Positions 4,293 to 44,333 of a DNA stretch of 64,000 bases are shown in pieces. The DNA lies in IMG/VR virus record IMGVR_UViG_3300042907_001080, positions 124,001 through 188,000 of that record. One strand, written 5' to 3'. The notes below the pieces were generated by a model. It had not been told where the DNA came from and made no database searches. It saw only the letters and a program-made list of their open reading frames with translations. Both the position numbers and the translations under genes were made by a program. Position 1 is the first letter of the stretch. Each line of letters opens with the position of its first letter.

Positions 4293-4296
4293 ATAC

Positions 4297-4971: not shown

Positions 4972-4973
4972 TC

Positions 4974-7091
4974 ATGCCATACATAGTTAATTTTACAGAT
5001 AAAGAAAACAAAAGTCCTATCACGGTGTTTGATAATACTTCTAGTACAGACACTAGTCTCAAATTTCCAGGTCGTAATGTTACCGGCTACGGTCAGATTA
5101 TCGCAGAGAATTTTTTATCACTGCTAGAAAATTTTGCATCTACTAGTCAACCAGTTAACCCTGTAGAAGGACAGCTTTGGTATGATAGTACAAGTGGAAC
5201 ACAAACCCTAAAAATATGGGATAATACTGCATGGAAAGCAGCATCCGGAATACAAAAAGGAGTTAGTCAACCTTCAGTAGAAACTAGTAAAGTAGGAGAA
5301 TTATGGGTAGACACTACCAATCAACAACTACGGATATTCACAGGCACACGATGGATATTAGTTGGGCCGGTTGAGAGTTCAGTTGGTGGCTTGAGATATG
5401 GACCGGTTATAGAAAAAATATCAGATTCTGATAACTTAGATAGATTTATTTTAACATTTTATATTGCAGATATTCCTGTAATTATTTTTTCCAAAGACAG
5501 TTTTACACCGAAGACTTTGATCACTGGATTTGCTCTGATAAAATCAGGCATCAACATCAGTGCTCCTGCAACGTCAGGTGAAATTGCAAATTTTGTAGGG
5601 GGATTTTTACCTGTGCTAAATGGCACAGCAAGAAATGCTCAAGCATTGTTAGTAGGGGGAGTAGAAAAAGCTGCGGGAACATTCCTTAGATCAGATACCA
5701 TCAACACCACTAATTTTGAAATAAAGATCAAAAACAATAACGGTATCTCTATAGGTGCTGATGAGACATTCAAGTTATCAGCTACAACAACATCTAGTAA
5801 TATCTATAACTCTGCTGCAGGCAGTTCTATAGATCTACAGACAAATCGCAACGGTATTCCAGCAACGGTTTTAAGAATTGTTGACAACAAAGTTGGTATA
5901 AATCAAAGCAATCCACTAGAAGCGTTAGACATTCAAGGCAATGCAAAAATCACAGGTTCTTTTTTTACTACCAGTAGCTTAGCCAGCACCAATTTAAATA
6001 ACGGCAGTATTGTTACTCAAGGTGGAATTGCAGTTGCAAAAAACATAATTGTCGGCGACGGCATCGATGTTACCGGTCCACTGCAAACTGCGTTTATATT
6101 ACCAAAAATTACAAACACATATGATATAGGCACTGCAACAAGACGCTTCAATAATATACGTGCCAAAACAATCATCGCAGATACTATACAAGGAGTGCTT
6201 GACGGAAACATCAGTGGCAATGCTAACACTGCGACATCTCTCAGCACAATTACTAGTTTTCAATTAGCAGGTGATGTGATTTCACCGGCTGTGCAATTTG
6301 ACGGGCAAGTAGGCAGTTCTACTAAAATTCTTAATGCCACACTCACAGCAAATATTATTGCAGGTAAAGAAACTCCGGTGCCTAATCGTGGCAAAAAAGG
6401 CGATTTTATTTTAACCTACAGACCTAGTGAAAGCACTCTAGCTAGTTCTGGTCTTCTTAAACAAACCAGAGAAGTGTTTCTTGGTGATCTAGCAGTGCCG
6501 ATAGGAGCTATTCTGCCGTATGCAGGTATTACTGCTCCTGATGGTTACTTGTTTTGTGACGGTTCAGAAATTGAAAGGGTAAAGTTTACAGATCTGTTTG
6601 ATGTGATCGGCAATGTATATAATGGAGCCACACCATTACTAGGAGTAAACACATTTAGATTACCTGATCTTAGAGGTAGATTTGCACTTGGTAAGGATAA
6701 TATGGATAATGCTGGCACCGTGCCGACTATTGCAGGTCCTTATGTAGATGCTGGCGGCGGCGTTGCAGGCCGAGTTCCGGATGTGCAGGCCACAATACTT
6801 GGGGGGTCAGCAGGACAAAGTTCTGTAGCGTTGACATTGCCGAACCTACCAGAACACAGTCATACACTGTCAACTCCCACTCAAGACTATTCTGCAGTTG
6901 CACTTACAACAACACTCGATCCGTTAGCCACTTCCGGACCTGGCCCAACAGCCCCAGGTCAGGCACAATATCTCAAAGACAGCGGCGGAGTAAAAAAAGC
7001 CGTGGGAGTAACACTAGCAACACCAGTAGGTTTAATGAATCCTTTCTTGGCAATGAATTATATTATAAGATCTGGACCACCAGCTTTCTAA
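4974..7091 (+). CDS. Tail fibre protein with C-terminal phage tail-collar domain
   Basis: Tail-collar signature 'PIGAILPYAG..APDGYLFCDGS...FRLPDLRGRF...MNPFLAMNYIIR'. N-terminal 'GRNVTGYGQ..ENF..LLENFA...P..P.EGQLWYD' domain shared with the next three genes. Confidence 0.8.
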   Translation: MPYIVNFTDKENKSPITVFDNTSSTDTSLKFPGRNVTGYGQIIAENFLSLLENFASTSQPVNPVEGQLWYDSTSGTQTLKIWDNTAWKAASGIQKGVSQPSVETSKVGELWVDTTNQQLRIFTGTRWILVGPVESSVGGLRYGPVIEKISDSDNLDRFILTFYIADIPVIIFSKDSFTPKTLITGFALIKSGINISAPATSGEIANFVGGFLPVLNGTARNAQALLVGGVEKAAGTFLRSDTINTTNFEIKIKNNNGISIGADETFKLSATTTSSNIYNSAAGSSIDLQTNRNGIPATVLRIVDNKVGINQSNPLEALDIQGNAKITGSFFTTSSLASTNLNNGSIVTQGGIAVAKNIIVGDGIDVTGPLQTAFILPKITNTYDIGTATRRFNNIRAKTIIADTIQGVLDGNISGNANTATSLSTITSFQLAGDVISPAVQFDGQVGSSTKILNATLTANIIAGKETPVPNRGKKGDFILTYRPSESTLASSGLLKQTREVFLGDLAVPIGAILPYAGITAPDGYLFCDGSEIERVKFTDLFDVIGNVYNGATPLLGVNTFRLPDLRGRFALGKDNMDNAGTVPTIAGPYVDAGGGVAGRVPDVQATILGGSAGQSSVALTLPNLPEHSHTLSTPTQDYSAVALTTTLDPLATSGPGPTAPGQAQYLKDSGGVKKAVGVTLATPVGLMNPFLAMNYIIRSGPPAF

Positions 7092-7102
7092 CAGAGTAAA
7101 AC

Positions 7103-8917
7103 ATGGCATATCAAATAAACAAAACTGACGGCACAATTGTAGCAACTGTAGCAGACGGCCAGATCGACGATCTTTCCACTGATATCACTCTTATAGGAAA
7201 GAATTTCAGCGGTTTCGGCGAAGCATTTAACGAGAATCTTATTAAATTGCTAGAGCATTTTTCTAGTAATACAGCCCCCATACACCCCATTAAAGGTCAA
7301 ATATGGTTTGACGCTAGCCAGTCAAAATTAAAAGTTTACAACGGTATTACTTTTGTTCCGGTAAGTTCGGCTACGGTATCGAGCTCCCAACCAAGCACAC
7401 TGGCCACCGGTGACCTTTGGTATGACGATATCGGAAAACAACTATACTTTTTTGATGGGGTTACAGCGGTGTTACTTGCACCGGCGTATAGTAGTGTGCA
7501 AGGTCTTAGCGGACTGAGAGTAGATACTATTTTAGATACACTAAATCAAACTAGGGTAGTAACTAGTCTTTATAATAATGGTGTGTTACTGGGAATTTTT
7601 TCCAAAGACAGTTTTACACCCAAAGTAGGAATCATAGGATTTAATGGCAATATAGAACCTGGTTTCAATGCAGGCACATTATCTAATTTTAAAATACGTG
7701 CGACTTGTATAAACAGCGATAGTTTAGGCGGAGCTCCGGCAACCACCTATGTTAGAACTGACACTTCTAATAGCATAAATGGGCAACTGCAGATTACTAG
7801 TGATTTAGGTATCACAGTAGGTTCAGCAGGCCAGGCAAATCTATTTGTTAGTGCAGGAGATGTATTGATAAGCAATGCTGCAACTGATAGGAATATTCAG
7901 TTGAGTGTTCGAAAGGGTATTACACAAGAAGCAGCTATCACGATTAATGCAGCAACAAGAAACATCGATCTATATTCTGGATTTACCAACAGCACAGTGG
8001 TCGCCGGCGGCGATCTAATAGTCAATGGTAATCTCACAGTCGAAGGAACGACTACAACTATTAATACCACAACAGTGGCGATAGAAGACAAAAATATTGT
8101 TATAGCTAATGTGGTTAGTCCTACAAACATCACGGCCGATGGTGCAGGTATCACAATCAAAGCGTCTACAGATAAAACTATAACTTACAACAACAGTAGT
8201 AATTGGCTTGATATATCCGAGACACTGAATTTAGCCGCAGGACGAGCAGTATATATTGGCGGAACTAAGGTAATAGATGGCAACAGTCTGGGTTCGGCTA
8301 TTACAAGTATTCCAGGAGTTAGTTCCTTTGGTACACAGACTGTAGTTAACATAGGTCCGGGTGCTCCTGCAGTCACTCAGATGAGACTGGAAAATCACAG
8401 AATCAGCACGGTGAGTACGAATTTTGATATTGAGTTAGAACCAGACGGCTCAGGAAATGTTGCATTGATCGGGTCTCCAAGAATCACCGGCATGCAAGAT
8501 CCTGTGGCAGCTCAAGATGCTGCCACCAAAGAGTATACAGATAACAGGGTGGAATCAAGACCTGTGATTTTTACTATTGATTTATCCGATGGCAAATCTA
8601 ATACATATATTATTACAAACATATTGAATAATCTTGCTCCTGTGAGCGAGTATAGAGCATTCACATATGCTAGAATTTTATGTAATTTGATAAGCAATAA
8701 CGCTCAATCTTTAAGTATAAATTCATTGCCACCGTCAATTTCCACAGCAGCATTTTTAACCAATCTTGGTGGAGCCAGCAGCCAAGCAATCACAAACATT
8801 AGTTTCCCCACAGCAACTATAGCTGCGGCAAGTGTCTCGGTAACAAGAATTATCAAAGTATTTCGAATAATCGGAGGAGTGTGGACATGGCAGTCGGATC
8901 TACCACTACCTCCATAA
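7103..8917 (+). CDS. Tail fibre-like protein (paralog 2)
   Basis: Same N-terminal domain (MAYQINKTDG...GKNFSGFGE..NEN..LLEHF). Gly/Thr/Ser-rich beta repeats; 'QDAATKEY' fibre motif. Confidence 0.7.
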   Translation: MAYQINKTDGTIVATVADGQIDDLSTDITLIGKNFSGFGEAFNENLIKLLEHFSSNTAPIHPIKGQIWFDASQSKLKVYNGITFVPVSSATVSSSQPSTLATGDLWYDDIGKQLYFFDGVTAVLLAPAYSSVQGLSGLRVDTILDTLNQTRVVTSLYNNGVLLGIFSKDSFTPKVGIIGFNGNIEPGFNAGTLSNFKIRATCINSDSLGGAPATTYVRTDTSNSINGQLQITSDLGITVGSAGQANLFVSAGDVLISNAATDRNIQLSVRKGITQEAAITINAATRNIDLYSGFTNSTVVAGGDLIVNGNLTVEGTTTTINTTTVAIEDKNIVIANVVSPTNITADGAGITIKASTDKTITYNNSSNWLDISETLNLAAGRAVYIGGTKVIDGNSLGSAITSIPGVSSFGTQTVVNIGPGAPAVTQMRLENHRISTVSTNFDIELEPDGSGNVALIGSPRITGMQDPVAAQDAATKEYTDNRVESRPVIFTIDLSDGKSNTYIITNILNNLAPVSEYRAFTYARILCNLISNNAQSLSINSLPPSISTAAFLTNLGGASSQAITNISFPTATIAAASVSVTRIIKVFRIIGGVWTWQSDLPLPP

Positions 8918-33213: not shown

Positions 33214-33653
33214 AGATTATCTTTCTTCACTGTTTTAATATCAATTACGCCTGTGTTTACAGGACCGCCGAAATCGCCATCGACTACTACATTGGCACAC
33301 AGTTCACGGAACCAACGATCTATAATTTCTTCGTCTTTGTCTCCGTCCTCACCATATCCCTCTTGCTTTAATTTTAACACAAAAAGGTCGTTCCAGTCAA
33401 GCTCAAAAAAGCCATTACGAACATTATCTTTGTTGACATGTGTTTCGATTACGCCTACCCACGGTTCTTTTTTACGTGTTGCACGTTCTTTTGGAGATAA
33501 TTTGGCCTGTGCCTCTGCTTCTGTAGCACGTTCGGCAGCTTCAGTGGCTGCTTTGGCTGTTTCAGAGGCTTGTGCTGCAATGCCTATTGATCGTTCTGCT
33601 TCTGCTCTGATCTTGTCAATACCAAATAATTTTTCAATCCATTTATTCATCAT
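33210..33653 (-). CDS. Hypothetical phage protein
   Basis: 147 aa, ATGA overlaps at both ends. Confidence 0.65.
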   Translation of the reverse strand: MMNKWIEKLFGIDKIRAEAERSIGIAAQASETAKAATEAAERATEAEAQAKLSPKERATRKKEPWVGVIETHVNKDNVRNGFFELDWNDLFVLKLKQEGYGEDGDKDEEIIDRWFRELCANVVVDGDFGGPVNTGVIDIKTVKKDNL

Positions 33654-34504
33654 GTTCCCCATTCATTTTTAAACAATGGCACCTGCAATCTGTCTGAATA
33701 TCTCAGTCCATGTTTCATTGCCAGTTCTGCTACTCTGCGGTTATTTAGTGTGTATACACTTTCAACCCCGCCCACAGGCATGAGATAAACATTACCAGTG
33801 AAACCTTCTGCACGATAGATATCCACAGCTTCTAGAGCTTCTTCTGCATCACCTTCAGTGGCCACTACTAATTTGAGATATACATGACCAGCTTCTTGAT
33901 ATTCACAGACTATGTCTGGGCGTATAGCTTCACTAGGCTGTTCTCCTGAACAACTGAGTTTGGCACTGACCGAGAATGTAACTTCTCTACTGGCAAAAGG
34001 AGGATTCTGTGCCCATTCTTGTAGATATTTTTTAAACTCCGGAGTTAGCTTTTGAGTACCGTTGGTTTCAAAAGTAATTTCTTTAAGACCTGTCATACTC
34101 AGATGATTCAACAGATCCGGATAAGCACGTTGCCAACCTAACAACGGTTCACCGCCAGTGATAACCAAGTGTTCATCTTCCCAACGCTTGTAAGGTAATA
34201 TTTCCATGATGCGTTCTGCAATCGCATCAGTTGTTAGCATGGGCGAAAGATCTTTGAATCTAGGATCCCAGCTGGCATAGCTATCACAACCTGTGCTTAC
34301 TAATGGTAAGTCTTGATATTTAAAAAACTTCTTAATATCGGCCGCAATAAAATCACGCTCCTTGCTTTGTTCACCACGTGACATACCAAAGCCGTCACAA
34401 GTAAAGTTACATCCAAACGTGCGTAAGAACACACTAGGGACACCCATATATCGGCCTTCGCCTTGTATGCTGTAAAAAAGTTCTGCTATTTTTATTTTGC
34501 TCAT
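33650..34504 (-). CDS. queE: 7-carboxy-7-deazaguanine synthase (radical SAM)
   Basis: 'ELFYSIQGEG...G.PSVFLRTFGCN', 'GCDS', 'VITGGEPLL', 'FETNGT', 'SAKL', 'YLMP', 'RLQV.L'; lies near folE, queD-like and dpdA. Confidence 0.9.
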   Translation of the reverse strand: MSKIKIAELFYSIQGEGRYMGVPSVFLRTFGCNFTCDGFGMSRGEQSKERDFIAADIKKFFKYQDLPLVSTGCDSYASWDPRFKDLSPMLTTDAIAERIMEILPYKRWEDEHLVITGGEPLLGWQRAYPDLLNHLSMTGLKEITFETNGTQKLTPEFKKYLQEWAQNPPFASREVTFSVSAKLSCSGEQPSEAIRPDIVCEYQEAGHVYLKLVVATEGDAEEALEAVDIYRAEGFTGNVYLMPVGGVESVYTLNNRRVAELAMKHGLRYSDRLQVPLFKNEWGT

Positions 34505-35067: not shown

Positions 35068-35445
35068 TCATTTTTTATAATTACCTTTTTCTGGAATAAC
35101 ATGTCTGACACCGCCTGTGGGGTCTTCCATGTCACCTTTGCGTCGAGGAATCAAATGAACATGTGGATACGGCACAGTCTGTCCAGCAGCTTCGCCCCAA
35201 TTAAGGCCAATATTGAATCCATCCCACTCACCATTTTTAACCTTTGCCTGCCCTACTCTCAGAGCATCAGCAAAACAATCTTCAATAACTCCCACAGCTG
35301 AATATTTAGGCACAAACAACAAGTGACCGTCTGTTACAGGATACTTGTCTTTAAAAACAACCACATGAAAGTCGTCTTGTACAACATCGTTCCATGGTGC
35401 CTGCCCTGCATCACGTGCATCGTCTAACGAATAATGTAAGTTCAT
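35068..35445 (-). CDS. HIT family nucleotide hydrolase
   Basis: 'DKYPVTDGHLLFVPK', 'GFNIGLNWGEAAGQTVPYPHVHLIPRRKGD'. Confidence 0.9.
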   Translation of the reverse strand: MNLHYSLDDARDAGQAPWNDVVQDDFHVVVFKDKYPVTDGHLLFVPKYSAVGVIEDCFADALRVGQAKVKNGEWDGFNIGLNWGEAAGQTVPYPHVHLIPRRKGDMEDPTGGVRHVIPEKGNYKK

Positions 35446-35669
35446 CGTTTATATTCCTTTCTTTCTGTAGGTAGGTCATCTTCTCGTACAACAAACTCAC
35501 GGCCGCCTAGACTGCCTGCAAATGCTTTAGTGCGTTCCATATAAACTAATCGTAGTTTAAGAGTTTGAAATGCAACATCTAAAAATGCCTTGGGCTTATA
35601 ACCTAGAACATGCATATCAAAATCTTTACCTGCGTCAGTGCAATGAACTTTAATCTTAGAATCGATCAT
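35442..35669 (-). CDS. Hypothetical protein
   Basis: 75 aa, ATGA overlaps. Confidence 0.55.
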   Translation of the reverse strand: MIDSKIKVHCTDAGKDFDMHVLGYKPKAFLDVAFQTLKLRLVYMERTKAFAGSLGGREFVVREDDLPTERKEYKR

Positions 35670-36205
35670 TTTGTCCACCAATCTTCCCAAGGAAAATCAA
35701 TCCATACATCCTTCTCTGCCTTGTTAACTTCCATGCCAACGAAATCCATCTTAACATTGCACTTGCTGGCGAGATTATCTACTAACACAGCAAATTTAAC
35801 ATTGTTATTCCACACTTCTTCCCAGGCTGGATCATCTGGAAAGCAACCACTTGGCCAATCTTTCATGATCCAGTTAAGTGTGGTGCCTTGATCGTTGATA
35901 TCATCTACAATTAAAATGTTTTTAAAAGCAGTATCGCTATCAACTGCACGATCCTTGGACAACGGTCCTAGAGCATCTTCAGCCATCCATAAATTACTCT
36001 CCGGACCAATCTCACTATCTCGTAGACTTACATTGAGAGTATGTAACGGAATATTAAAATATTGACTGATCATAACAGCAGGAATCAATCCCCCTCGAGT
36101 AATTCCTACAATATAATCGGGCCTCCACGTTCCTATAGCAAGCTCTCTACAAATCTTGCCGACTAGTCCGGTTACTTCATGCTGGTTGATTTTGAGTTTG
36201 TTCAT
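35666..36205 (-). CDS. Type I phosphoribosyltransferase (Gpt/Hpt-like purine PRTase)
   Basis: 'VGITRGGLIPA', PRPP loop 'ILIVDDINDQGTT', C-terminal 'WIDFPWE'. Confidence 0.85.
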   Translation of the reverse strand: MNKLKINQHEVTGLVGKICRELAIGTWRPDYIVGITRGGLIPAVMISQYFNIPLHTLNVSLRDSEIGPESNLWMAEDALGPLSKDRAVDSDTAFKNILIVDDINDQGTTLNWIMKDWPSGCFPDDPAWEEVWNNNVKFAVLVDNLASKCNVKMDFVGMEVNKAEKDVWIDFPWEDWWTK

Positions 36206-36644
36206 TTCTATCCTTGAGATATTGTTCGTGTTGTATCCATTTGTTGTTGACTAAAAATCCCCATTCACGTTTATGCGGGCCAGGCATGAATAGGGTCCAA
36301 GCAGTTATTCCAGGTTGAAGTTCGATGCGATGATAGCTATTAGAACCACAAATACGGAAGTGACCAGGACCCCGCCAATGCTTGGTCTCTCCAATCATTT
36401 GGCCATTTTCGAAATTAGGAGTATATTCATAGTATCCACCTTTTAGTATCAGTGTAGCATAGGGCCACGGATGATCATGAACATCGTCAGGATCACCTTT
36501 GAGGAATTTATGTAAAAATACGTTGAATGGAAAACGATCTCTTTCTTTCAAGAAGAGATAATACCGTTCGAGATACGGTTCGTTATTAACACGATCATAA
36601 ATGATACGCTTGCGGCCCAGTCGTTCAAGCAGTTTCAAAAACAT
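36177..36644 (-). CDS. Cupin-fold protein
   Basis: 'HDHPW....IL.GGY.E' and 'YHRIEL' metal-binding cupin motifs. Confidence 0.75.
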   Translation of the reverse strand: MFLKLLERLGRKRIIYDRVNNEPYLERYYLFLKERDRFPFNVFLHKFLKGDPDDVHDHPWPYATLILKGGYYEYTPNFENGQMIGETKHWRGPGHFRICGSNSYHRIELQPGITAWTLFMPGPHKREWGFLVNNKWIQHEQYLKDRNEQTQNQPA

Positions 36645-37044
36645 TATTAACTTCTTCCTTGAGATATCTTATCAGTTCTTTATCTGTGGGCGATACACTA
36701 TAATTGTTCTTGTAAAAAATCTCATAGCTGTCGCTGCCGTATTTTCCAATGCCATATAACATTGTAGCATCATTTCCGTCCCAAGTCAAATAGTCTTGAC
36801 TCATTCTAATCAATCGAGTATAACGAACATTAACCATTCCGAGTGGTTGGATTATGCTTTTGACAAACTCTTCGTCTGCTTGTAGCAATGCCAGTGCTGT
36901 AGGAAACCAATATAGAAATTCTGGCAGAGTGGTCTTCACAGCTTTGCGACCAGTTTGATTTAACATAATTACCCCAACAAAATGCTGCCAAGCATTGTCA
37001 ACTTGTTGTTGCACCATTAGATCGTCACGTAGAGGTTTAATCAT
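36625..37044 (-). CDS. MBD4-like HhH-GPD DNA glycosylase
   Basis: 'W...V..IMLNQT', 'FPT', 'IQPLGM', HhH 'LYGIGKYGSDSYEIF' and catalytic-Asp region 'PTDKEL..YL', paralleling the MBD4 glycosylase domain. Confidence 0.8.
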   Translation of the reverse strand: MIKPLRDDLMVQQQVDNAWQHFVGVIMLNQTGRKAVKTTLPEFLYWFPTALALLQADEEFVKSIIQPLGMVNVRYTRLIRMSQDYLTWDGNDATMLYGIGKYGSDSYEIFYKNNYSVSPTDKELIRYLKEEVNNVFETA

Positions 37045-38118: not shown

Positions 38119-38231
38119 TATATTTCCTTAATAAAGTATTTTGATGCAGGGTATTGCACCTGCAACCACTCTAACAAGCCCGCTTCAACTGGTAAGCGAA
38201 CGCTATCAAACTTGTTAGTAATGTATCTCAT
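38118..38231 (-). CDS. Microprotein (37 aa), absent from the ORF track
   Basis: MRYITNKFDSVRLPVEAGLLEWLQVQYPASKYFIKEI; ATGA overlap with the folE stop and TAATG overlap downstream. Confidence 0.55.
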   Translation of the reverse strand: MRYITNKFDSVRLPVEAGLLEWLQVQYPASKYFIKEI

Positions 38232-38974
38232 CGTGGCGAAAATTCTTGCTGCATTTTAATATTGTCAAAGAATTCTTTCTTTGTTCCTGGATCATCTTTA
38301 AATGCACCTTTGAGTACAGTGGTCTGTGTTAGACTCGAATGCGCCATAATGCCACGATTCTCACAGCAACCGTGAGTGGCTTGTATGTATACTCCGATGT
38401 TTTCACTATCTGTAGCTCGACTTATTTCTCTTGCAATATCATTGCAGAGTTCTTCCTGGAGAGTGCCACGCCTAGCGCACCACTGAGCAATACGAGTATA
38501 CTTGCTAAGGCCAATAAGTTTGTTGGCAGCAATGATACCAATATAAGCCACCCCAGATACAGGCTGGTGATGATGACTACACATACTACGCAATTCACTT
38601 CTAACAACCAACATTCCTTCATATCTATCCTCACTATCATTCGGAAACGCTGTTGCATCTGGAGCAGGGTCGTATCTACCTGACATGATTTCATTAAAAT
38701 ACATTTTAGCAAGTCTACGTGCTGTGCCTTTACTGTTGGGATCATTTTCACGATCAATAAGCAAACTGTCTAGCACTTGTTCAAATGCAGGAGTTGCTTC
38801 GTCAATTAATTTTTCTAAGTCGCCGTCATGCAGATAATCACTGATGTTGTCACCGGCCCAGAAACGCTTGCCTTCACGTTTCATCTTAAAACGAATGTGA
38901 TCACCTAGATATGCTTCTTTATATCCGCCATCGCCTGCCATTGCGTCCAGGCCTGTTTCTGTTTTATTTGTCAA
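38228..38974 (-). CDS. folE: GTP cyclohydrolase I
   Basis: 'TARRLAKMY', 'SMCSHH', 'IGLSKY.RI', 'LQEEL', 'ATHGC...RG'; TTG start with SD GGAG. Confidence 0.93.
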   Translation of the reverse strand: MTNKTETGLDAMAGDGGYKEAYLGDHIRFKMKREGKRFWAGDNISDYLHDGDLEKLIDEATPAFEQVLDSLLIDRENDPNSKGTARRLAKMYFNEIMSGRYDPAPDATAFPNDSEDRYEGMLVVRSELRSMCSHHHQPVSGVAYIGIIAANKLIGLSKYTRIAQWCARRGTLQEELCNDIAREISRATDSENIGVYIQATHGCCENRGIMAHSSLTQTTVLKGAFKDDPGTKKEFFDNIKMQQEFSPR

Positions 38975-39013
38975 TTTATTCTCCGAGTTAATGACGTGGA
39001 TGTCATATAATAG

Positions 39014-40078
39014 TTATTTTAACATCTCTAATAGTTTATTACAACTAAAAAAGTTTTCTTGTAGTATAGCTACCTGTTTATTTAGGCTAGGCAGTCGAGT
39101 TTCGTAATTATCCATATGCTGGATTATTTCTCTACAAATATCTGGACGATATACAGTATATGCATCGTAGCTCTCAGTCCATTTGCTAGGATACTTAAAT
39201 GTATCTAAAGCCATTTCACTATAGCTGAGTCTATCAGGAACCATAGGAATGGCACCTACAATAGCACCTTCATACCAACTGATGCCTAGGGTTTCTTGCA
39301 GGTTTGCACTAAACACCAATTTGGCTTCGCCTAGCAAATTATGATATTCGTTTTTTGTTAGTTGTTGATCTTGACAGACGACAAATTCATATTGCGGTAA
39401 GTGTTCTTTCAAGTCACGAAAGATTTCAACCTGTTTCTCTGGAGCGATACGATGCGGGAACAAGATAAGATCACGTTTAGTCATGTTTTTATACATTGTT
39501 AACGTGTCCTCCATATACTCCATAGGCCAACCTGTGCGCACAATCTTAGTATCATATAGTTTTTTTGCTGGAGTAAATCCTAACAAATTTTCACAAAACA
39601 TGTCAATATGAAACTGTGTAGCAAAGTAGTTGTGATCAAACGCATGATAGAAACTTTGTTCAGCATTTCTAACCCAGGGTTTATTTCCTACAAGGCGTCC
39701 TAAGAAGTCTTGCGGATCATATGAGCCAGCATGCCAAAGACCATGTGTAGTTACTGGAATTCCCAGTAGCTCACTCATATACTTTAAATTTATGATACCA
39801 GGATGCCAAGCATCAGTAAAGATAAAGTGATCGCCGGGATGAATGGATCCGTTACAAAATAACCTACCCATTTGTTCAATTTGACTAGCCTTGTAGATAT
39901 TCGTGCCGCCAAAGTTGAGAAATGCTCCAGGAGTGGTAGCACTAGGAATGTCCGTAGGACCTGATATAATGTTGACATGGTGCCCTGCTTTTTTAAGGAT
40001 TGCCGGCACGTGAGTTTTCCACTGACCCGTATATCTAGTCTCTACTGCTTCAAGATCAATGAGAAAAACTCGTGCCAT
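39014..40078 (-). CDS. GT-B (GT4-like) glycosyltransferase within the deazaguanine locus
   Basis: C-terminal 'FPHRIAPEKQ', E-x7-E motif 'QETLGISWYEG', 'VPDRLSYSE'. Confidence 0.8.
   Translation of the reverse strand: MARVFLIDLEAVETRYTGQWKTHVPAILKKAGHHVNIISGPTDIPSATTPGAFLNFGGTNIYKASQIEQMGRLFCNGSIHPGDHFIFTDAWHPGIINLKYMSELLGIPVTTHGLWHAGSYDPQDFLGRLVGNKPWVRNAEQSFYHAFDHNYFATQFHIDMFCENLLGFTPAKKLYDTKIVRTGWPMEYMEDTLTMYKNMTKRDLILFPHRIAPEKQVEIFRDLKEHLPQYEFVVCQDQQLTKNEYHNLLGEAKLVFSANLQETLGISWYEGAIVGAIPMVPDRLSYSEMALDTFKYPSKWTESYDAYTVYRPDICREIIQHMDNYETRLPSLNKQVAILQENFFSCNKLLEMLK
39016..39044 (-). promoter_or_regulatory. Possible sigma70-type promoter for folE
   Basis: TTGTAA-17 nt-TAAAAT. Confidence 0.4.
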
Positions 40079-40081
40079 TAA

Positions 40082-40306
40082 TTAACCTCTTTTTTGAAAG
40101 TGTGGTCTGTTGCCTTGATATGGACGTCTTGGCCGTTTGCTGGCAAGATAGGATCCATAGTTTTGACTATCCCTGCGATAGAGATCTGCAGGATTAAAAT
40201 CGCAGAGTTGAAATCTGCACCAATCGTGGTAGGCCTCGAGGTCCTCCCACACCTTTACAACGTCAGGACGATTTTCAAAGTACCTGTAGTCCTTGTAGTT
40301 TTTCAT
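40082..40306 (-). CDS. Hypothetical protein
   Basis: 74 aa, SD AAGGA. Confidence 0.6.
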   Translation of the reverse strand: MKNYKDYRYFENRPDVVKVWEDLEAYHDWCRFQLCDFNPADLYRRDSQNYGSYLASKRPRRPYQGNRPHFQKRG

Positions 40307-40317
40307 CGATGTTCCTT

Positions 40318-40707
40318 TTAGTATTTGATGAATGAACCATTTTCTCCGTCTTCGGAGACCTCAATCCAAATCTCGCGACCTGGATACTTTTTGCTAATGA
40401 CGTCATATAAGTCGCCTGACATCATTTCACAACTCTTATAATCTAAACTTAGTGTAGCATCTTTGTAGAGATTTAGCAACCATCGTTTAAACTGAATAAA
40501 CTCAATATCACGATCATCGTGTGTAACGCCAATCCAAACTTTGAAGTGAAAGATGTGACGATGCGGATAACCTAGAAAACTTACATCATATTCATCACCT
40601 GTAGCAAGTGCTGGGTCTGTAAGTGCAGCTGGATATTTGTGCATACCTTCTTTCTGAAAGGTAACCCAAATCATTTTGTTAGGTCTAACGTCTTGTCGAA
40701 TGTTCAT
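40318..40707 (-). CDS. queD: QueD/PTPS-like T-fold protein (probable 6-carboxytetrahydropterin synthase)
   Basis: 'EGMH', 'HRH.FHF', 'RDIEF..FK', 'SCEM', 'VSEDGENG' are consistent with the PTPS/QueD fold; context next to folE. Confidence 0.65.
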   Translation of the reverse strand: MNIRQDVRPNKMIWVTFQKEGMHKYPAALTDPALATGDEYDVSFLGYPHRHIFHFKVWIGVTHDDRDIEFIQFKRWLLNLYKDATLSLDYKSCEMMSGDLYDVISKKYPGREIWIEVSEDGENGSFIKY

Positions 40708-41078
40708 CTTAGTTGTTCCATGGTTATAATTTTAGATAATTCTTCACCGAGATCTTTATCTTCAGTGACCACATGTAGACTGTGTCGATTCTCATCGTTC
40801 TTTCGGTCATACTTGGTAGTTTCAATGATAGTACCGCCACTAGCGCCATAGACATTTAGTCGAAAACCTTGTGATGCAATGTTTGGGCCTTCGCTGTCAA
40901 CTGAAATAAGCTGATTACTGTAATCTTCTTCGTCGTTCATTAGCCAGTTGCGAATTTTTTGTTTAAATGTTAATTTCATAGGTTTCTTTTCTACTACACT
41001 TCTTGCACGATTAATTTTATTAGCACCGCGGATTCTTGGAACCTTTGTCACCGATGCTACTGCGTAGCCACCACTCAT
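40704..41078 (-). CDS. Hypothetical protein
   Basis: 124 aa, ATGA-coupled. Confidence 0.6.
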   Translation of the reverse strand: MSGGYAVASVTKVPRIRGANKINRARSVVEKKPMKLTFKQKIRNWLMNDEEDYSNQLISVDSEGPNIASQGFRLNVYGASGGTIIETTKYDRKNDENRHSLHVVTEDKDLGEELSKIITMEQLR

Positions 41079-41608
41079 TTGATAATCTCATCTTTACCAT
41101 ATTGATCCCAACTAGTAAACTTATTTCTATCTAGTAGGTCATGGAGGTTATGGCACCACACTCCGTGATTAGTTGCTTTAAAGTCTTTGTCATCAATTTT
41201 CAGCGTAGCGTTATAGCCTAGTTGATTAATATAAGGTAATTTTACACTAATCTGCGGAATAAATCTACGCTTTTCGGTAAGACCACTTTCAAGCAATCCT
41301 TCCGTTTCACGAACATCAAAGTCTAAGGTACACCAAAATTCGTCCTCTGCATCTAAGCAGACATAGATCATATCTTCCCAAGGACGCCATGTTTCTGTAT
41401 CGTTAACACCATTAGTCTTAAAACTTTGATTAGCACCAAAGTAAATATGTTTGCACCTGTTGTTACGAGCCAATTCCATAATAATATATGGATCATGCAC
41501 ACCTACAACAAACAGTGTTTTCATTCCGTAGGCAGGAGTATGTTCAATCTCTACGCCGGTGAAGAAGGTAATGCTATCAGCAACACCTGAATCGTAATTT
41601 CTTTTCAT
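41075..41608 (-). CDS. Hypothetical enzyme-like protein in the dpd locus
   Basis: 177 aa alpha/beta pattern ('FFTGVEIEHTPAYGMKTLFVVG', 'HIYFGANQSF'). Confidence 0.65.
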   Translation of the reverse strand: MKRNYDSGVADSITFFTGVEIEHTPAYGMKTLFVVGVHDPYIIMELARNNRCKHIYFGANQSFKTNGVNDTETWRPWEDMIYVCLDAEDEFWCTLDFDVRETEGLLESGLTEKRRFIPQISVKLPYINQLGYNATLKIDDKDFKATNHGVWCHNLHDLLDRNKFTSWDQYGKDEIIK

Positions 41609-41751
41609 TTTTTAAATAAATTTTGAATTGATCGGATTAGATTAAGAAATCGAAAATGATAGTCGGTTAAGAATGGAGTTCGATGCGGACAACGACCTTG
41701 TTGCCAATCACAGTTAACTGTGATTTCTTGCCTGCATGTGTCGCATTTCAT
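41605..41751 (-). CDS. Cys-rich microprotein (48 aa), absent from the ORF track
   Basis: MKCDTCRQEITVNCDWQQGRCPHRTPFLTDYHFRFLNLIRSIQNLFKK; ATGA overlaps at both ends. Confidence 0.6.
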   Translation of the reverse strand: MKCDTCRQEITVNCDWQQGRCPHRTPFLTDYHFRFLNLIRSIQNLFKK

Positions 41752-41975
41752 AGTTCTAGTCCATTTCTTCTTGCTTCTTGTTCTGCCTGCGCTTCTTGCA
41801 TCACTGCTTCGTGCTTGTGTTTAAGTATAACAATATCATCCTTTAAACGCAACCTTTGTTTCTTCAATTCTTCTATTTTTAGGTCATCAAAGATACCAGT
41901 TTTTTCCATACTGTCTATCTGTTTGTCCAAAGCACGGTGAGCTTCTTCTAGATGCTTGATTCTATTTTGATACAT
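41748..41975 (-). CDS. DUF465/YdcH-like coiled-coil protein
   Basis: 'L...H..LD..I........DD..I..LKK.RL.LKD.I' pattern. Confidence 0.7.
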   Translation of the reverse strand: MYQNRIKHLEEAHRALDKQIDSMEKTGIFDDLKIEELKKQRLRLKDDIVILKHKHEAVMQEAQAEQEARRNGLEL

Positions 41976-41984
41976 ATCAACTCC

Positions 41985-43595
41985 TTATTCTACAACCAAA
42001 CTGTTTAATTCGTCATCGTCTGGATTGGCAAAATCAATTTCGCCTGCTTTCTTGCCATCATCGAAATCAAATAAGTTACCAAATGTGTTAGCAGCAGGAC
42101 CGCCTTGTAAACGTGAACCTTCTAGTGATTTCAAGAACTGCGCACCAGTTTCAATCATATCAAACGCTTCTGCTTTGGTTTTGGTATTGAATAGTTCTTC
42201 AACAAATGTACCGAAGTAAAGAATTTTATTTGGAACCCAATCGCTGAATTCAATTTCTTTCTTGCCTTCAATGCTCTTCATACGCCAGTCTGGAGTAAAC
42301 CTAGCACATTCAATATCCATTAACTGTTGAGCACGTTGCACCGCTTTGATATGACATTCGACATTATGCCCCATCATTAGTGCGTAACTGAAACTATCCC
42401 AACTAGTCTTGTTTGGAATCTTACCTAGCTTGTTAAGTCTCGGAACTTCGTGATAGTGTTCTGGATTCAAGTGATTAAACTTAACATCTCCGAGTTCGGC
42501 ATCTGTCTTACGAACACCGTAATTGTAATATGCAATATCGCCCATGGTCAAACGGCTTCCGAATTCACTTTCAAAAGGAAACGGAATATCAAATCGTCCT
42601 GAAAGTGCTTTATTATCAGGAGCCTTGTCCATGATCACTGACCAACGCTTGTTGGTATGTTGTGCATTTGTGTAAACAAGTCCGTGAGCAGTAGCAATGA
42701 ACGGGCTTGCACAGTCAAAACTGATTGTGAGTTCTGGATTGATGTGTTTACGGATCTGACGTTGAATTTGAGTTAGATAGCATGACCAATCTAATTGTGC
42801 TGTGCCCAAGAAGTGAATCCAGTTCTTGCCGTCTAGCATTCCTTCGTCACGCATGGTCATTAGACGTTTGAGTGTGATATCCATCTTACACATATTAGCA
42901 CCACCAAATGCCCAACCTTCTGCTTCTTTTCCTGCAAATGGTCCTTTGGGATCGCTGAACTCTACAACGCCACGATACCACTTTTCTGCAGTATCCCAAT
43001 CACCGCCTTGCAATACATTAAGCCACTTGGTAGCTCCCAACCGATTATCTAGAAAATACTTGTTATTATAACGAGTCTTTTCTAAACAGTCTTCGAATGT
43101 TTTCAATCCAGTCTTCGGACTGTGGATGTGATCACAGGCCCATGTAGGCACGTCTAACATCATTGACCAATCAGCAGTTGCTTCTAGCCATTCAAGAATC
43201 TTTTGACGTGTCTTGGTAGCTTCTGCACCTTCAAAGTTCAACCAATCAAACTTGAGAACACCTTTACCGATCTGATAACCACCGGAGTCGCCTAAAATCA
43301 TTGTTTGTCCGCGATCACGCTGTTGTATCATGGATTCTTGATCCTGTGCTTTGATAACATCAAGTTGAGCGTGTCCTGCTGAATACAGAGCATACTTATA
43401 GGTAAAGTATCCTTGATCTGGATTAAGAAAGTTCATTCCTTCAATTCCTTGATCAAAGCCTGCAGGAATACGATCCTTTGGTACAAACTCTTCTAGTCGC
43501 TGTTTTGCAACATAGGTAGAATAAAAAGAACTAATTGCCGGCAGATATACTGCATAGTCCTTTTGTAATGGTGTTAGATTAACTGGTGGTTTCAT
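41985..43595 (-). CDS. dpdA: DpdA-like DNA 7-deazaguanine transglycosylase (TGT superfamily)
   Basis: TGT motifs 'DSGGYQI', 'MMLDVP', 'LNVLQG', 'GWAFGG', 'IHFLG', 'SFDCASP'; adjacent to replication genes and near folE, queD-like and queE. Confidence 0.85.
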   Translation of the reverse strand: MKPPVNLTPLQKDYAVYLPAISSFYSTYVAKQRLEEFVPKDRIPAGFDQGIEGMNFLNPDQGYFTYKYALYSAGHAQLDVIKAQDQESMIQQRDRGQTMILGDSGGYQIGKGVLKFDWLNFEGAEATKTRQKILEWLEATADWSMMLDVPTWACDHIHSPKTGLKTFEDCLEKTRYNNKYFLDNRLGATKWLNVLQGGDWDTAEKWYRGVVEFSDPKGPFAGKEAEGWAFGGANMCKMDITLKRLMTMRDEGMLDGKNWIHFLGTAQLDWSCYLTQIQRQIRKHINPELTISFDCASPFIATAHGLVYTNAQHTNKRWSVIMDKAPDNKALSGRFDIPFPFESEFGSRLTMGDIAYYNYGVRKTDAELGDVKFNHLNPEHYHEVPRLNKLGKIPNKTSWDSFSYALMMGHNVECHIKAVQRAQQLMDIECARFTPDWRMKSIEGKKEIEFSDWVPNKILYFGTFVEELFNTKTKAEAFDMIETGAQFLKSLEGSRLQGGPAANTFGNLFDFDDGKKAGEIDFANPDDDELNSLVVE

Positions 43596-44333
43596 TTAAG
43601 CAGCCTGTGCTGGGATAATATATTTGTAAGTTGCTAGTCCGCTATCTAGAGTGATCTGAATAGCACCTTCATTGCTCAACGACATCTTAGCAGTGTTGGT
43701 ATCTGAAATCTTAAGTATGCTCAAGATCGGAGCAACTGGCCAAGTCCAACCGCGATCTAATTTGCCTGCAACATTCTGTGCAAACACAAACTCACCACCG
43801 TGTGTTGATGCATCACCGAATGTAAATTTAAGATTACCGCCTTCAGTTTTAGCAAGGAATGTGGGATGCTCTGAGTTAGCACCTGCTTGAAAGTTAAAAC
43901 GAATCACAGAAGTCACTGATGGTTCGATTTCAACATCCCACTTAACACCACGAAACTTCACAGTCTTCATCTTTTCATTGATGATTTCTTGATTCATGAA
44001 GCGATAGTCGTTCTTGAAGTCGCCGTCTTTGTTTTCAAAGTGTAGACCTACTGGCAAAGTTTCGCCATTGCGTTCTGCTGTGGTGATACTGATCTTTGCA
44101 CCTTCTTTGTATTCTGCACCTTCCAACAGATATTTCAACTTGTTCAGTTGCGGCATGCCAAACACACCAATCATATCTGGATACGGATTAGCAGTTTCTG
44201 CTTCCATGATCACTGAACGGTCATCTGCCATTGAGTTAATAGTTGTGCCTTTGTCTGTGCCTGTGACTTTAACTGTGGTCAAGAAGCCGAGGTTCTGTGT
44301 GTGGCTAACGATGTCTTGTAAAATATCTTTCAT
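43596..44333 (-). CDS. Putative DNA sliding clamp (gp45/PCNA-like)
   Basis: 245 aa two-domain beta-alpha pattern ending 'GAIQITLDSGLATYKYIIPA'; directly downstream of the polymerase; clamp loader is in the window. Confidence 0.7.
   Translation of the reverse strand: MKDILQDIVSHTQNLGFLTTVKVTGTDKGTTINSMADDRSVIMEAETANPYPDMIGVFGMPQLNKLKYLLEGAEYKEGAKISITTAERNGETLPVGLHFENKDGDFKNDYRFMNQEIINEKMKTVKFRGVKWDVEIEPSVTSVIRFNFQAGANSEHPTFLAKTEGGNLKFTFGDASTHGGEFVFAQNVAGKLDRGWTWPVAPILSILKISDTNTAKMSLSNEGAIQITLDSGLATYKYIIPAQAA

What the first reader, a model, noticed from the sequence alone, without database searches (positions are those of the whole stretch)
38228..41975. No queC/queF/Gat here, but orphan genes fill the dpd operon
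Seen: the enzymes present stop at CDG; no QueC (SGGxDS) or QueF is visible in the window. Translationally coupled unknowns lie between dpdA and folE (41075-41608, 40704-41078, 40082-40306, DUF465-like, a Cys microprotein). Inference: the inserted base is CDG-derived, host QueC is borrowed, or 41075-41608 is a new tailoring enzyme that makes the acceptor for the GT. The T-fold protein could instead be a CDG decarboxylase-type paralog.
Basis: partly seen in the sequence, partly recalled or inferred. Interest (0 to 1): 0.6.

Follow-up and report, generated by a model that had tools for sequence, protein, structure and literature searches.

The report
Phage deazaguanine island with sugar transferase
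This stretch of a 282-kb environmental jumbo phage is the core of a gene island that replaces guanine in the phage's DNA with a 7-deazaguanine base, and three of its "orphan" genes travel with that pathway in many unrelated phages, which suggests the known pathway is incomplete.

Summary
The ORFs, the translational coupling and the absence of queC/queF/Gat from the window are all confirmed.

Most of the "orphans" can now be named:
- 40318-40707 is DpdL, the proposed 7-carboxy-7-deazaguanine (CDG) decarboxylase. It carries the published LxxxHRHxF signature.
- 41985-43595 is a divergent DpdA. Its model has a tRNA-guanine transglycosylase (TGT) fold (Z 18.4) and an invariant DSGGYQ motif, but Pfam gives no TGT hit.
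- 39014-40078 is a GT4-like glycosyltransferase with an EX7E motif.
- 41075-41608 (X177) is a confidently folded protein (pLDDT 95) with no known family or clear fold relative. It belongs to a very large family.

X177, DpdL, the 74-aa ORF and the glycosyltransferase follow DpdA in 40-42 of 42 related viral contigs. The glycosyltransferase sits beside DpdL in six of twelve isolate lineages and in two further metagenomic phage types. X177 also recurs across lineages. The 124-aa ORF, the Cys microprotein and DUF465 are lineage-specific.

QueD lies elsewhere in the genome, as does a weak QueC-like PP-loop gene.

Best reading: a DpdL-type 7-deazaguanine DNA modification system with undescribed, probably sugar-adding, companions. 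This is a new variant of a known kind.

The parts
41985..43595 (-). DpdA-like DNA guanine transglycosylase, 536 aa, of a divergent subfamily
   Evidence: Foldseek top 7 PDB hits are all TGT (1q2r E 8.6e-7; the first non-TGT hit is at 5.8e-3). VIA Z 18.4 with about 300 residues aligned, and all top 50 rows are TGT. D103-S-G-G-x-Q108, D148 and D294 are invariant in the family. hhalign to the ACP17/BUDD/BUCT-ZZ01/BCSR5 DpdA group gives prob 89.8%, E 1.8e-6. A homolog in Vibrio phage 2.275.O sits near QueF, YhhQ and QueC. There is no Pfam TGT hit.
41748..41975 (-). DUF465 coiled-coil protein, 75 aa; lineage-variable
   Evidence: PF04325 E 9.3e-13. Present in 19/42 related contigs.
41605..41751 (-). 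Cys-rich microprotein, 48 aa (CxxC...C...C.H); lineage-variable
   Evidence: Translation. Present in 9/42 related contigs. ATGA overlaps on both sides.
41075..41608 (-). X177: conserved alpha/beta protein of unknown family, linked to DpdA/DpdL/GT
   Evidence: 7241 clusters at 90% identity and 602 at 50% identity, with no Pfam hit. AF2 pLDDT 95.1. No clear fold relative: best Z 6.6. Present in 42/42 lineage contigs. Lies beside DpdA/GT/DpdL in ACP17, L007-9, L101, L104 and L006.
40704..41078 (-). X124: orphan of 124 aa; lineage-variable
   Evidence: No family hit. Present in 22/42 related contigs.
40318..40707 (-). DpdL, a T-fold QueD paralog and proposed CDG decarboxylase
   Evidence: The motif L-G-Y-P-H-R-H-I-F matches LxxxHRHxF as defined in PMC10516641. 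55% identical to the ACP17 homolog and 31% to phiST DpdL. phrog_17812 E 3e-30. Present in 42/42 contigs.
40082..40306 (-). X74: small basic protein conserved between DpdL and the GT within the lineage
   Evidence: Present in 40/42 related contigs and always in the order DpdL>X74>GT. No family hit.
39014..40078 (-). GT4-like (GT-B) glycosyltransferase, 354 aa
   Evidence: EX7E motif (E262...E270; E270 invariant) and an 'F-P-H-R-I-A-P-E-K' block. Weak Pfam GT1/GT4 hits in 5 of 21 homologs, best E 2.5e-4. Best PDB sequence hit is the GT4 enzyme WlaC, E 0.05. Atlas features point to glycosyl transferase family 1. Present in 41/42 contigs. Lies next to DpdL in PA5oct-like phages, Phosso, ACP17, BUDD/X1, BCSR5, BUCT-ZZ01, L007 and L104.
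38228..38974 (-). GTP cyclohydrolase I (FolE). The listed TTG start may be too far upstream.
   Evidence: PF01227 E 1e-38; phrog_2197 E 8e-44. The homology begins near residue 56.
33650..34504 (-). QueE, 7-carboxy-7-deazaguanine synthase (radical SAM)
   Evidence: phrog_2076 E 6.6e-54. NCBIfam QueE models match at about 1e-13, and Pfam Radical_SAM matches.
35666..36205 (-). Purine-type phosphoribosyltransferase; a probable accessory
   Evidence: PF00156 E 2e-13. Nearest NCBIfam models are xanthine PRTase and HGPRT. A homolog sits next to QueE in PA5oct and BUCT-ZZ01. Present in 21/30 contigs with a long downstream flank.
36177..36644 (-). Cupin ('cysteine dioxygenase'-like) protein between QueE and FolE; role unknown
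   Evidence: phrog_4786 E 4e-37. Present in 23/30 contigs with a long downstream flank.
35068..35445 (-). HIT-family nucleotide hydrolase/transferase; role unknown
   Evidence: PF01230 E 1.4e-10. Present in 16/30 contigs.
36625..37044 (-). Short HhH-GPD (EndoIII/MutY-like) domain protein; role unknown
   Evidence: PF00730 E 4.7e-8. Weak mutY/nth NCBIfam matches. Present in 9/30 contigs.

Best explanation
The region is the core of a phage 7-deazaguanine DNA-modification island of the DpdL type.

Shown by homology:
- FolE and QueE in the window, with QueD elsewhere in the genome, match the enzymes that make 7-carboxy-7-deazaguanine (CDG) from GTP.
- The 129-aa T-fold protein is DpdL, the proposed CDG decarboxylase that yields 7-deazaguanine.
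- The 536-aa protein is a divergent TGT-fold DpdA.

Inferred: DpdA exchanges guanine in replicated phage DNA for the deazapurine, which protects the genome from restriction.

Shown by comparative genomics: a GT4-like glycosyltransferase, the novel protein X177 and, within this lineage, the 74-aa protein are fixed companions of DpdL and DpdA.

Inferred, with less confidence: these companions carry out an undescribed further step. The most likely one is adding a sugar to the deazapurine or its precursor, or supplying the donor for that transfer.

The 124-aa ORF, the Cys microprotein and DUF465 are variable fillers of this lineage, not pathway parts.
For: Pathway genes: FolE, QueE and QueD.

DpdL: the signature motif and homology to the ACP17 and phiST proteins.

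DpdA: TGT fold with Z 18.4 and Foldseek E 8.6e-7; an invariant DSGGxQ block and two further invariant Asp; hhalign prob 89.8% to phage DpdAs.

No alternative pathway: no QueF, no Gat and no thymidylate-synthase-like enzyme in the record, so there is no preQ1 route and no hydroxymethyl-pyrimidine acceptor for the GT.

Linkage within the lineage: X177 42/42, DpdL 42/42, X74 40/42 and GT 41/42 contigs with at least 3.5 kb downstream of dpdA, in a fixed order.

Linkage across lineages:
- GT lies within 3 kb of DpdL in PA5oct-like phages, Phosso, ACP17, BUDD/X1, BCSR5 and BUCT-ZZ01, and in the same cluster in metagenomic L007-9 (about 4 kb away) and L104. These phages use at least two DpdA subfamilies.
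- All 17 isolate records with a GT354 hit covering at least 80% of the query also carry DpdL.
- X177 lies next to DpdA, GT or DpdL in ACP17, L006, L007-9, L101 and L104.

Experimental context from papers:
- PA5oct DNA resists G-containing restriction sites and is attacked by nucleases that sense hypermodified DNA (PMC12191111).
- ACP17 dpdL plus dpdA alone gave no dDG in E. coli, and the authors suggested further enzymes may be needed (PMC10516641).
Against: - No chemistry was measured for any phage with this module.
- DpdL's decarboxylase activity is itself only predicted.
- Plain 7-deazaguanine offers no hydroxyl for an O-glycosyltransferase.
- Six DpdL lineages lack the GT, X177 and a recognisable DpdA within 8 kb of DpdL: phiST-like, RHph_I1_18, Ahp1, D479, Bakedbeans and MA9V-3. 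phiST DNA holds plain dDG.
- X177 also occurs without dpd genes in one context (L102/L103). In PA5oct it lies 30 kb from dpdA.
- The window's GT does not reach any Pfam gathering score, and it was not folded.
- A conserved QueC-like gene elsewhere in the genome could divert CDG to ADG or preQ0.
- The TGT zinc site (CxCxxC...H) is not visible in the 536-aa protein.
Confidence: 0.72

Rival explanations
1. The phage's own QueC-like PP-loop enzyme converts CDG to ADG or preQ0, and DpdA inserts that base, giving dADG or dPreQ0 DNA. In this reading DpdL, the GT and X177 do something other than make or tailor 7-deazaguanine.
For: A QueC-like gene with an SGGADS PP-loop and a C-terminal C...CxxCxxC motif lies at genome 243273-244109. 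It scores 24.1 bits against the Pfam QueC cut-off of 22. The family is conserved in the lineage: 1746 proteins, most with a precomputed PF06508 hit, and JGI names some of them QueC.
Against: It scores only 16 bits against the NCBIfam QueC equivalog cut-off of 150, and its best N-terminal match is to TilS. It lies about 80 kb from the island, at the head of an operon with an SGNH-like gene and four radical-SAM genes. It has no homolog in PA5oct, ACP17 or any isolate phage that shares the DpdL/GT module. DpdL is conserved in 42/42 contigs right beside dpdA.
Confidence: 0.12
2. The glycosyltransferase and X177 are not part of the DNA-base pathway. They act on another target (a pterin-type small molecule, as pteridine glycosyltransferases do, or a protein or host envelope sugar) and sit here only because they share early or middle expression with replication genes.
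For: 7-deazaguanine has no obvious acceptor hydroxyl. FolE-derived pterins are glycosylated by GT-B enzymes in cyanobacteria and Chlorobium (PMC5683033, PMC4133829). X177 occurs after two sugar-type oxidoreductases with no dpd genes in L102/L103. Half of the DpdL lineages lack the GT.
Against: Close GT354 homologs in 50,697 isolate phage records are found only in DpdL phages and within 3 kb of DpdL, in genomes as different as 156-kb T4-like and 469-kb jumbo phages with different DpdA types. No sepiapterin-reductase-type gene was seen in the island. DpdL lacks the catalytic Cys of PTPS/QueD.
Confidence: 0.2
3. One reading: 41075-41608 (X177) is a tailoring enzyme that creates the acceptor group on the deazapurine, which the glycosyltransferase then uses.
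For: X177 has 13 near-invariant residues, many of them polar (E22, H54, K137, D140, N147, W151), which is typical of an enzyme. It is fixed between dpdA and dpdL in the lineage. It lies next to the GT in L007 and two genes from it in L104.
Against: It has no cofactor-binding or catalytic motif of any known family. hhalign to QueE gives prob 0.35%. The best fold matches (STAS Z 6.6, QueE Z 5.9) are in the range of chance arrangements. BUDD, BCSR5, Phosso and BUCT-ZZ01 have the GT beside DpdL but no detectable X177.
Confidence: 0.15
4. Pre-replicative route: the phosphoribosyltransferase turns the free deazapurine into a nucleotide that the phage polymerase incorporates. The TGT-like protein then plays a minor or different role.
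For: A purine-type PRTase is conserved in the island and sits next to QueE in PA5oct and BUCT-ZZ01. A HIT nucleotide enzyme lies nearby.
Against: A DpdA is present in every such cluster, with its catalytic Asp residues intact. The PRTase is equally well explained as salvage of the guanine that DpdA releases. It is present in only 21/30 contigs.
Confidence: 0.08

Closest known systems
DpdL-type 7-deazaguanine (dDG) system of Cellulophaga phage phiST (Cui et al. 2023, PMC10516641)
   Same: FolE, QueD, QueE, DpdL with the LxxxHRHxF signature and a DNA transglycosylase. No QueF or Gat.
   Different: phiST uses a 259-aa DpdA3 that is unrelated by HMM to the 536-aa protein here. phiST has no GT354 or X177 homolog nearby. 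Its DpdL is only 31% identical. This genome also keeps a QueC-like gene.
Acidovorax phage ACP17 cluster (QueD-x-FolE-X177-DpdA-GT-DpdL-QueE)
   Same: It has the same DpdL (55% identity), GT (37%) and X177 (30%) in one cluster with FolE, QueD and QueE.
   Different: The ACP17 DpdA belongs to the KVP40/nt-1-like group, with only a marginal HMM match to the protein here. X74, X124, Cys48 and DUF465 are absent. ACP17 is a 156-kb T4-like phage.
Pseudomonas jumbo phage PA5oct (Wroclawvirus) genes EST35_0316-0322
   Same: It is the closest isolate relative: DpdA 43%, GT 45%, DpdL 55%, with the PRTase next to QueE. Its DNA behaves as G-modified (PMC12191111).
   Different: The genes are annotated as hypothetical. 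Its X177 homolog (EST35_0364) lies 30 kb away. It has no homolog of the QueC-like gene.
Bacterial and eukaryotic tRNA-guanine transglycosylase (TGT, PF01702)
   Same: The (beta/alpha)8 TGT fold over about 300 residues (Z 18.4) and the DSGGYQ block.
   Different: There is no Pfam or PDB sequence-level match. No CxCxxC zinc motif is seen. It carries roughly 100-residue N- and C-terminal extensions. The presumed substrate is DNA.
T4 alpha- and beta-glucosyltransferases (sugar on 5-hydroxymethylcytosine)
   Same: A phage-encoded GT-B-type sugar transferase embedded in a DNA-base modification module.
   Different: The record has no hydroxymethylase-type enzyme. The partner pathway makes a deazapurine, not a pyrimidine. 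There is no detectable sequence relationship. The acceptor is unknown.

Membership tests
Phage Dpd-type 7-deazaguanine DNA modification system | A DpdA (TGT-superfamily) DNA transglycosylase is encoded | tested here: met
   TGT fold with Z 18.4 and Foldseek E 8.6e-7. DSGGxQ is invariant. hhalign prob 89.8% to phage DpdAs.
Phage Dpd-type 7-deazaguanine DNA modification system | CDG pathway genes FolE, QueD and QueE are encoded | tested here: met
   FolE and QueE are in the window. QueD is at genome 220988-221515.
Phage Dpd-type 7-deazaguanine DNA modification system | A 7-deazaguanine derivative is present in virion DNA | not testable with these tools
   This needs LC-MS/MS. There is only indirect support from the restriction resistance of PA5oct DNA (PMC12191111).
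DpdL (proposed CDG decarboxylase) | Signature LxxxHRHxF in place of the QueD motif CxxxHGH | tested here: met
   L-G-Y-P-H-R-H-I-F at residues 45-53. Aligned with eight other DpdL proteins and four QueDs.
DpdL (proposed CDG decarboxylase) | T-fold / PF01242-like relationship | tested here: inconclusive
   hmmscan gives no PF01242 hit. In the MAFFT alignment with QueDs one His and two Glu columns are shared. The protein was not folded. The paper used HHpred.
DpdL (proposed CDG decarboxylase) | Found in phages with DpdA, FolE, QueD and QueE but without QueC | tested here: inconclusive
   The first four are present. A weak QueC-like PP-loop gene also exists, about 80 kb from the island.
DpdL (proposed CDG decarboxylase) | Decarboxylates CDG to 7-deazaguanine | not testable with these tools
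   The activity has never been shown in vitro. Heterologous tests in the source paper were negative.
tRNA-guanine transglycosylase (Pfam TGT, PF01702) | Matches the family profile above the gathering score | tested here: not met
   No hit in the protein or in the six-frame genome scan. No PDB sequence hit, even with a profile.
tRNA-guanine transglycosylase (Pfam TGT, PF01702) | Catalytic Asp in DSGG(F/Y)Q, a base-binding Asp and a nucleophile Asp in an xFDC block | tested here: met
   D103, D148 and D294 are invariant in 26 homologs and in the 7-member set that includes PA5oct, Phosso and a Vibrio phage. The equivalence to TGT residues rests on motif resemblance recalled from Z. mobilis TGT, not on a residue-level superposition.
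tRNA-guanine transglycosylase (Pfam TGT, PF01702) | Zinc site CxCxxC...H after the barrel | tested here: not met
   No such Cys cluster appears in the sequence. Residues 297-325 are modelled with low confidence.
GT4-type (GT-B, retaining) glycosyltransferases | EX7E motif in the C-terminal domain | tested here: met
   E262 (near-invariant) and E270 (invariant), eight residues apart.
GT4-type (GT-B, retaining) glycosyltransferases | Matches Glycos_transf_1 / Glyco_transf_4 profiles above the cut-off | tested here: not met
   The window protein has only sub-threshold hits. Five of 21 homologs hit PF00534 (best E 2.5e-4), and others hit PF13524, PF13692 and PF20706. The PDB profile search gives the GT4 enzyme WlaC at E 0.05.
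GT4-type (GT-B, retaining) glycosyltransferases | Two-Rossmann-domain GT-B fold | not tested
QueE / radical SAM (considered for X177) | Cys triad binding the 4Fe-4S cluster, and profile similarity | tested here: not met
   X177 has no CxxxCxxC-type motif. hhalign prob is 0.35%. There is only a middling fold resemblance: Z 5.9 with 127 residues aligned, and Atlas TM 0.57.
QueC (7-cyano-7-deazaguanine synthase), for the gene outside the window | Equivalog-level match with PP-loop SGGxDS and a C-terminal zinc motif | tested here: inconclusive
   SGGADS and C...CxxCxxC are present. Pfam gives 24.1 bits against a cut-off of 22. NCBIfam QueC gives 16.2 bits against a cut-off of 150.3, and the best match is TilS_N.

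The most novel reading that the evidence does not exclude
The DpdL + GT4-like + X177 module, found here and in PA5oct, ACP17, Phosso, BUDD/X1, BCSR5 and BUCT-ZZ01, writes a sugar-bearing 7-deazaguanine derivative into DNA. As far as I know, this would be the first glycosylated purine-type base in a genome. X177 would be a new enzyme family that prepares the acceptor or the donor.
Probability: 0.3. Interest if true: 0.85.

Novelty: new variant of a known kind. Interest (0 to 1): 0.6.

Why it matters
Eight 7-deazaguanine DNA bases and their enzymes are catalogued (PMC10516641). A searchable paper or preprint linking a glycosyltransferase or the X177 family to them was not found, although the search was limited to open-access full text.

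This module is not a curiosity. The DpdA, X177 and QueC-like families each have thousands of metagenomic members. It also sits in PA5oct-type jumbo phages of Pseudomonas aeruginosa that are under study, and their DNA is already known to behave as G-hypermodified.

The finding gives a concrete reason why dpdL plus dpdA alone failed in E. coli. It also names the genes to add. If the sugar idea holds, it defines a new DNA base and a new target class for modification-dependent defence nucleases. If it fails, the island is still a clean new DpdA subfamily plus DpdL.

Tried and rejected
- X177 as a cluster-less QueE derivative. The N-terminal motif looked similar, and QueE appeared among the fold neighbours. 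hhalign gave prob 0.35%, so this is dropped to a weak lead.
- Searches on X177 that found nothing useful: Foldseek against PDB (best E 0.012, Arf GTPases, TM 0.38); BFVD (only the ACP17 homolog); a PDB profile search (picornavirus VP2 at E 0.024, treated as chance); Atlas feature search.
- Megablast of the island against isolate phages: no match.
- PDB sequence searches with DpdA536, its profile, or GT354: nothing meaningful.
- The Phosso 177-aa 'glycosylase' upstream of DpdL is not an X177 homolog.
- Supplementary tables of Cui et al. are not held. The accession they call ACP17 DpdL/DpdA was therefore inferred from the motif.
- A Kdo-donor idea, prompted by KDO8P synthase next to QueD: no KdsB or SIS-domain gene is in the record. 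It was not pursued.
- The PA5oct X177 neighbourhood is all hypothetical proteins and uninformative.
- Complex prediction, read laying and the look-up of sequencing runs were not used. No binding or expression claim is made.
- No alternative genetic code was needed.

Full report
**Setting**

The window is bases 124001-188000 of a 281,658-bp viral record that is estimated to be 80% complete. Genes from 29.6 to 50 kb all run on the minus strand. They include a family-B DNA polymerase, a sliding clamp, an RNase H-type exonuclease and a DsbA-like regulator.

No isolate phage matches at the DNA level. At the protein level the nearest isolates are the Pseudomonas jumbo phages of the PA5oct group. The lineage is very abundant in metagenomes. 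The 536-aa protein, X177 and the QueC-like protein each have roughly 1,700 to 7,400 cluster representatives.

**Observation**

The run DUF465>Cys48>X177>X124>DpdL is joined by four consecutive ATGA overlaps. The remaining junctions from the clamp gene to FolE are 0-39 nt.

FolE (38228-38974) and QueE (33650-34504) are clear.

Six-frame family scans of the whole record gave these results:
- No QueF, no GATase_7, no DUF6610 and no thymidylate-synthase-like enzyme.
- No Pfam TGT match.
- QueD only at genome 220988-221515, outside the window.
- One weak QueC-family match at genome 243273-244109, also outside the window.

**The T-fold protein is DpdL**

The 129-aa product of 40318-40707 carries L-G-Y-P-H-R-H-I-F. 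This is exactly the LxxxHRHxF signature that Cui et al. give for DpdL, in place of the QueD motif CxxxHGH (PMC10516641).

The protein aligns with eight other DpdL proteins and is clearly separate from four QueDs. It is 55% identical to the ACP17 homolog and 31% identical to phiST DpdL. phiST is the phage in which 2'-deoxy-7-deazaguanine was measured.

**The 536-aa protein is a DpdA**

It has no Pfam, NCBIfam or PDB sequence match. Several other lines of evidence identify it:
- An AlphaFold model built on 26 homologs has mean pLDDT 71, with about 90 in the core.
- In Foldseek its seven best hits are all TGT (best E 8.6e-7). The next, non-TGT fold is at 5.8e-3.
- VIA-align gives Z 18.4 over about 300 residues that span almost the whole TGT chain. 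All 50 top rows are TGT.
- D103-S-G-G-x-Q108, D148 and D294 (in an S-F-D-C block) are invariant.
- Profile-profile comparison with the DpdAs of ACP17, BUDD, BUCT-ZZ01 and BCSR5 gives prob 89.8%, E 1.8e-6. The same blocks align.
- A homolog in Vibrio phage 2.275.O lies near QueF, a YhhQ-type transporter and QueC.

It is not the phiST DpdA3 type. It is also not the KVP40/nt-1-like type used by ACP17. I therefore treat it as a separate, divergent DpdA subfamily. No TGT-type zinc motif is visible.

**The 354-aa protein is a GT4-like glycosyltransferase**

- The family keeps an EX7E motif, with E262 near-invariant and E270 invariant.
- It also keeps an F-P-H-R-I-A-P-E-K block. This block aligns with the equivalent block of the GT4 enzyme WlaC in the only PDB profile hit (E 0.05).
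- Five of 21 homologs give weak Glycos_transf_1 hits, and others hit related GT-B families.
- Language-model features point the same way.
- Some depositors annotate homologs as glycosyltransferase.

The protein was not folded, and it does not reach a Pfam cut-off. The assignment is good but not formal.

**X177 (41075-41608)**

This family has 602 clusters at 50% identity. It has no Pfam, PHROG or NCBIfam hit.

Its model is excellent (pLDDT 95.1). It has 13 near-invariant residues.

No convincing fold relative was found:
- Foldseek against PDB gave nothing below E 0.01.
- The exhaustive VIA search topped out at Z 6.6 (STAS domains) and Z 5.9 (QueE, 127 residues aligned).
- The Atlas shape search returned QueE clusters at TM 0.57.
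- BFVD returned only the ACP17 homolog.

The QueE resemblance was tempting in this context, but hhalign rejects it (prob 0.35%), and X177 has no iron-sulfur Cys motif. X177 therefore remains a novel alpha/beta protein that looks like an enzyme.

**Linkage**

I fetched 80 IMG/VR loci that carry a DpdA536 homolog of 61-100% identity. Of these, 42 extend at least 3.5 kb downstream of dpdA. Gene presence in those 42 contigs was:

| Gene | Contigs |
|---|---|
| X177 | 42/42 |
| DpdL | 42/42 |
| GT | 41/42 |
| X74 | 40/42 |
| FolE | 31/42 |
| X124 | 22/42 |
| DUF465 | 19/42 |
| Cys48 | 9/42 |

The order DpdA>X177>DpdL>X74>GT is constant in all of them.

Outside the lineage, the GT lies within 3 kb of DpdL in six isolate lineages: PA5oct-like phages, Phosso, ACP17, BUDD/X1, BCSR5 and BUCT-ZZ01. 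It also lies in the same cluster as DpdL in metagenomic L007-9 (about 4 kb away) and L104. These genomes range from 156 to 469 kb and use at least two DpdA types.

All 17 isolate records whose GT354 hit covers at least 80% of the query also carry DpdL.

X177 lies beside DpdA, GT or DpdL in:
- ACP17.
- L007-9.
- L101, where it overlaps the end of dpdA.
- L104.
- L006.

There are counter-examples:
- Six DpdL lineages have no GT, no X177 and no recognisable DpdA within 8 kb: phiST-like, RHph_I1_18, Ahp1, D479, Bakedbeans and MA9V-3.
- In PA5oct, X177 is 30 kb away from dpdA.
- One X177 context (L102/L103) has sugar-type oxidoreductases and no dpd genes.

**Mechanism**

Shown by homology: FolE, QueD and QueE match the enzymes that make CDG. 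DpdL is the candidate decarboxylase that gives 7-deazaguanine. The TGT-fold protein has the catalytic residues of a base-exchange enzyme.

Inferred: DpdA swaps the base into replicated DNA.

Inferred from synteny only: the GT, X177 and X74 add a further step. A sugar transfer is the natural guess. It would fit two published observations. PA5oct DNA is targeted by nucleases that sense hypermodified bases (PMC12191111). ACP17 dpdL plus dpdA alone produced no dDG.

The weak point is chemical. 7-deazaguanine has no hydroxyl, so the acceptor is unknown.

The purine-type PRTase (35666-36205) sits next to QueE in PA5oct and BUCT-ZZ01. It may recycle the guanine that DpdA releases. This is inference.

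**The QueC-like gene**

It has an SGGADS PP-loop and a C...CxxCxxC tail. It just passes the Pfam QueC cut-off and is conserved in the lineage.

Against a true QueC role: it is far below the NCBIfam QueC equivalog cut-off. It is absent from every isolate phage that shares the module. It heads a separate operon with four radical-SAM genes. I regard it as a separate system, but it keeps a dADG/dPreQ0 rival alive.

**Verdict**

The island is a DpdL-type 7-deazaguanine system, which is a known kind. What is new is a divergent DpdA subfamily and three conserved, undescribed companions. I found no paper or preprint that links a glycosyltransferase or X177 to these pathways, within a search limited to open-access full text.

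Noticed in passing
outside the window: genome G000:C1 238370-244109 (minus strand): The QueC-like PP-loop gene heads a run with an SGNH-like 206-aa gene and four consecutive radical-SAM genes. Two of these have a SPASM domain at the N-terminus. A fifth radical-SAM gene lies at 247788-248942 (+). It looks like a separate, unexplained biosynthetic operon.
   Followed up: partly
outside the window: genome G000:C1 217301-221515 (minus strand): QueD sits next to a full-score KDO8P synthase (NCBIfam 406 bits against a cut-off of 242), a UvdE UV endonuclease and an Fe/Mn superoxide dismutase. No KdsB or SIS-domain gene was found in the record.
   Followed up: partly
window 35068-37044 (minus strand): A HIT protein, a purine-type PRTase, a cupin ('cysteine dioxygenase' PHROG) and a short HhH-GPD glycosylase-like protein lie between QueE and FolE. 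The PRTase recurs next to QueE in PA5oct and Synechococcus phage BUCT-ZZ01.
   Followed up: partly
L105 7212-8363 (Vibrio phage Bakedbeans gp176) and L107 7464-8345 (Chryseobacterium phage MA9V-3): In these phages the DpdL domain is the C-terminal part of larger proteins of 383 and 293 aa.
   Followed up: no
proteins P0292, P0302, P0313, P0323, P0337: Some X177 homologs carry C-terminal tails of 100-170 aa that are low-complexity, acidic and lysine-rich, with a recurring 'D-S-E-L-G-L-D ... L-K-P-E' element. One carries a spurious precomputed Portal_T4 label.
   Followed up: no
L102 6252-8516 and L103: An X177 homolog (36% identity) follows GFO_IDH_MocA and ADH_N oxidoreductase genes in a contig of about 30 kb with Prim-Pol, VapE and terminase genes. 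No dpd genes lie within 8 kb.
   Followed up: partly
L094 2885-3379 (Xanthomonas phage BUDD): The BUDD cluster FolE-...-GT-DpdA-DpdL-QueE includes a 164-aa gene annotated as 'PAPS reductase family', i.e. a PP-loop-type protein, directly after FolE. It was not compared with the QueC-like gene here.
   Followed up: no
window 38228-38974: The FolE ORF as listed starts at a TTG, but homology to FolE begins near residue 56. In-frame ATG codons at residues 11 and 31 may be the true start.
   Followed up: no
window 43596-44333: The 245-aa gene abutting dpdA (0-nt gap) is a sliding-clamp homolog. It is annotated as a clamp in Phosso but as 'structural protein' in PA5oct.
   Followed up: partly
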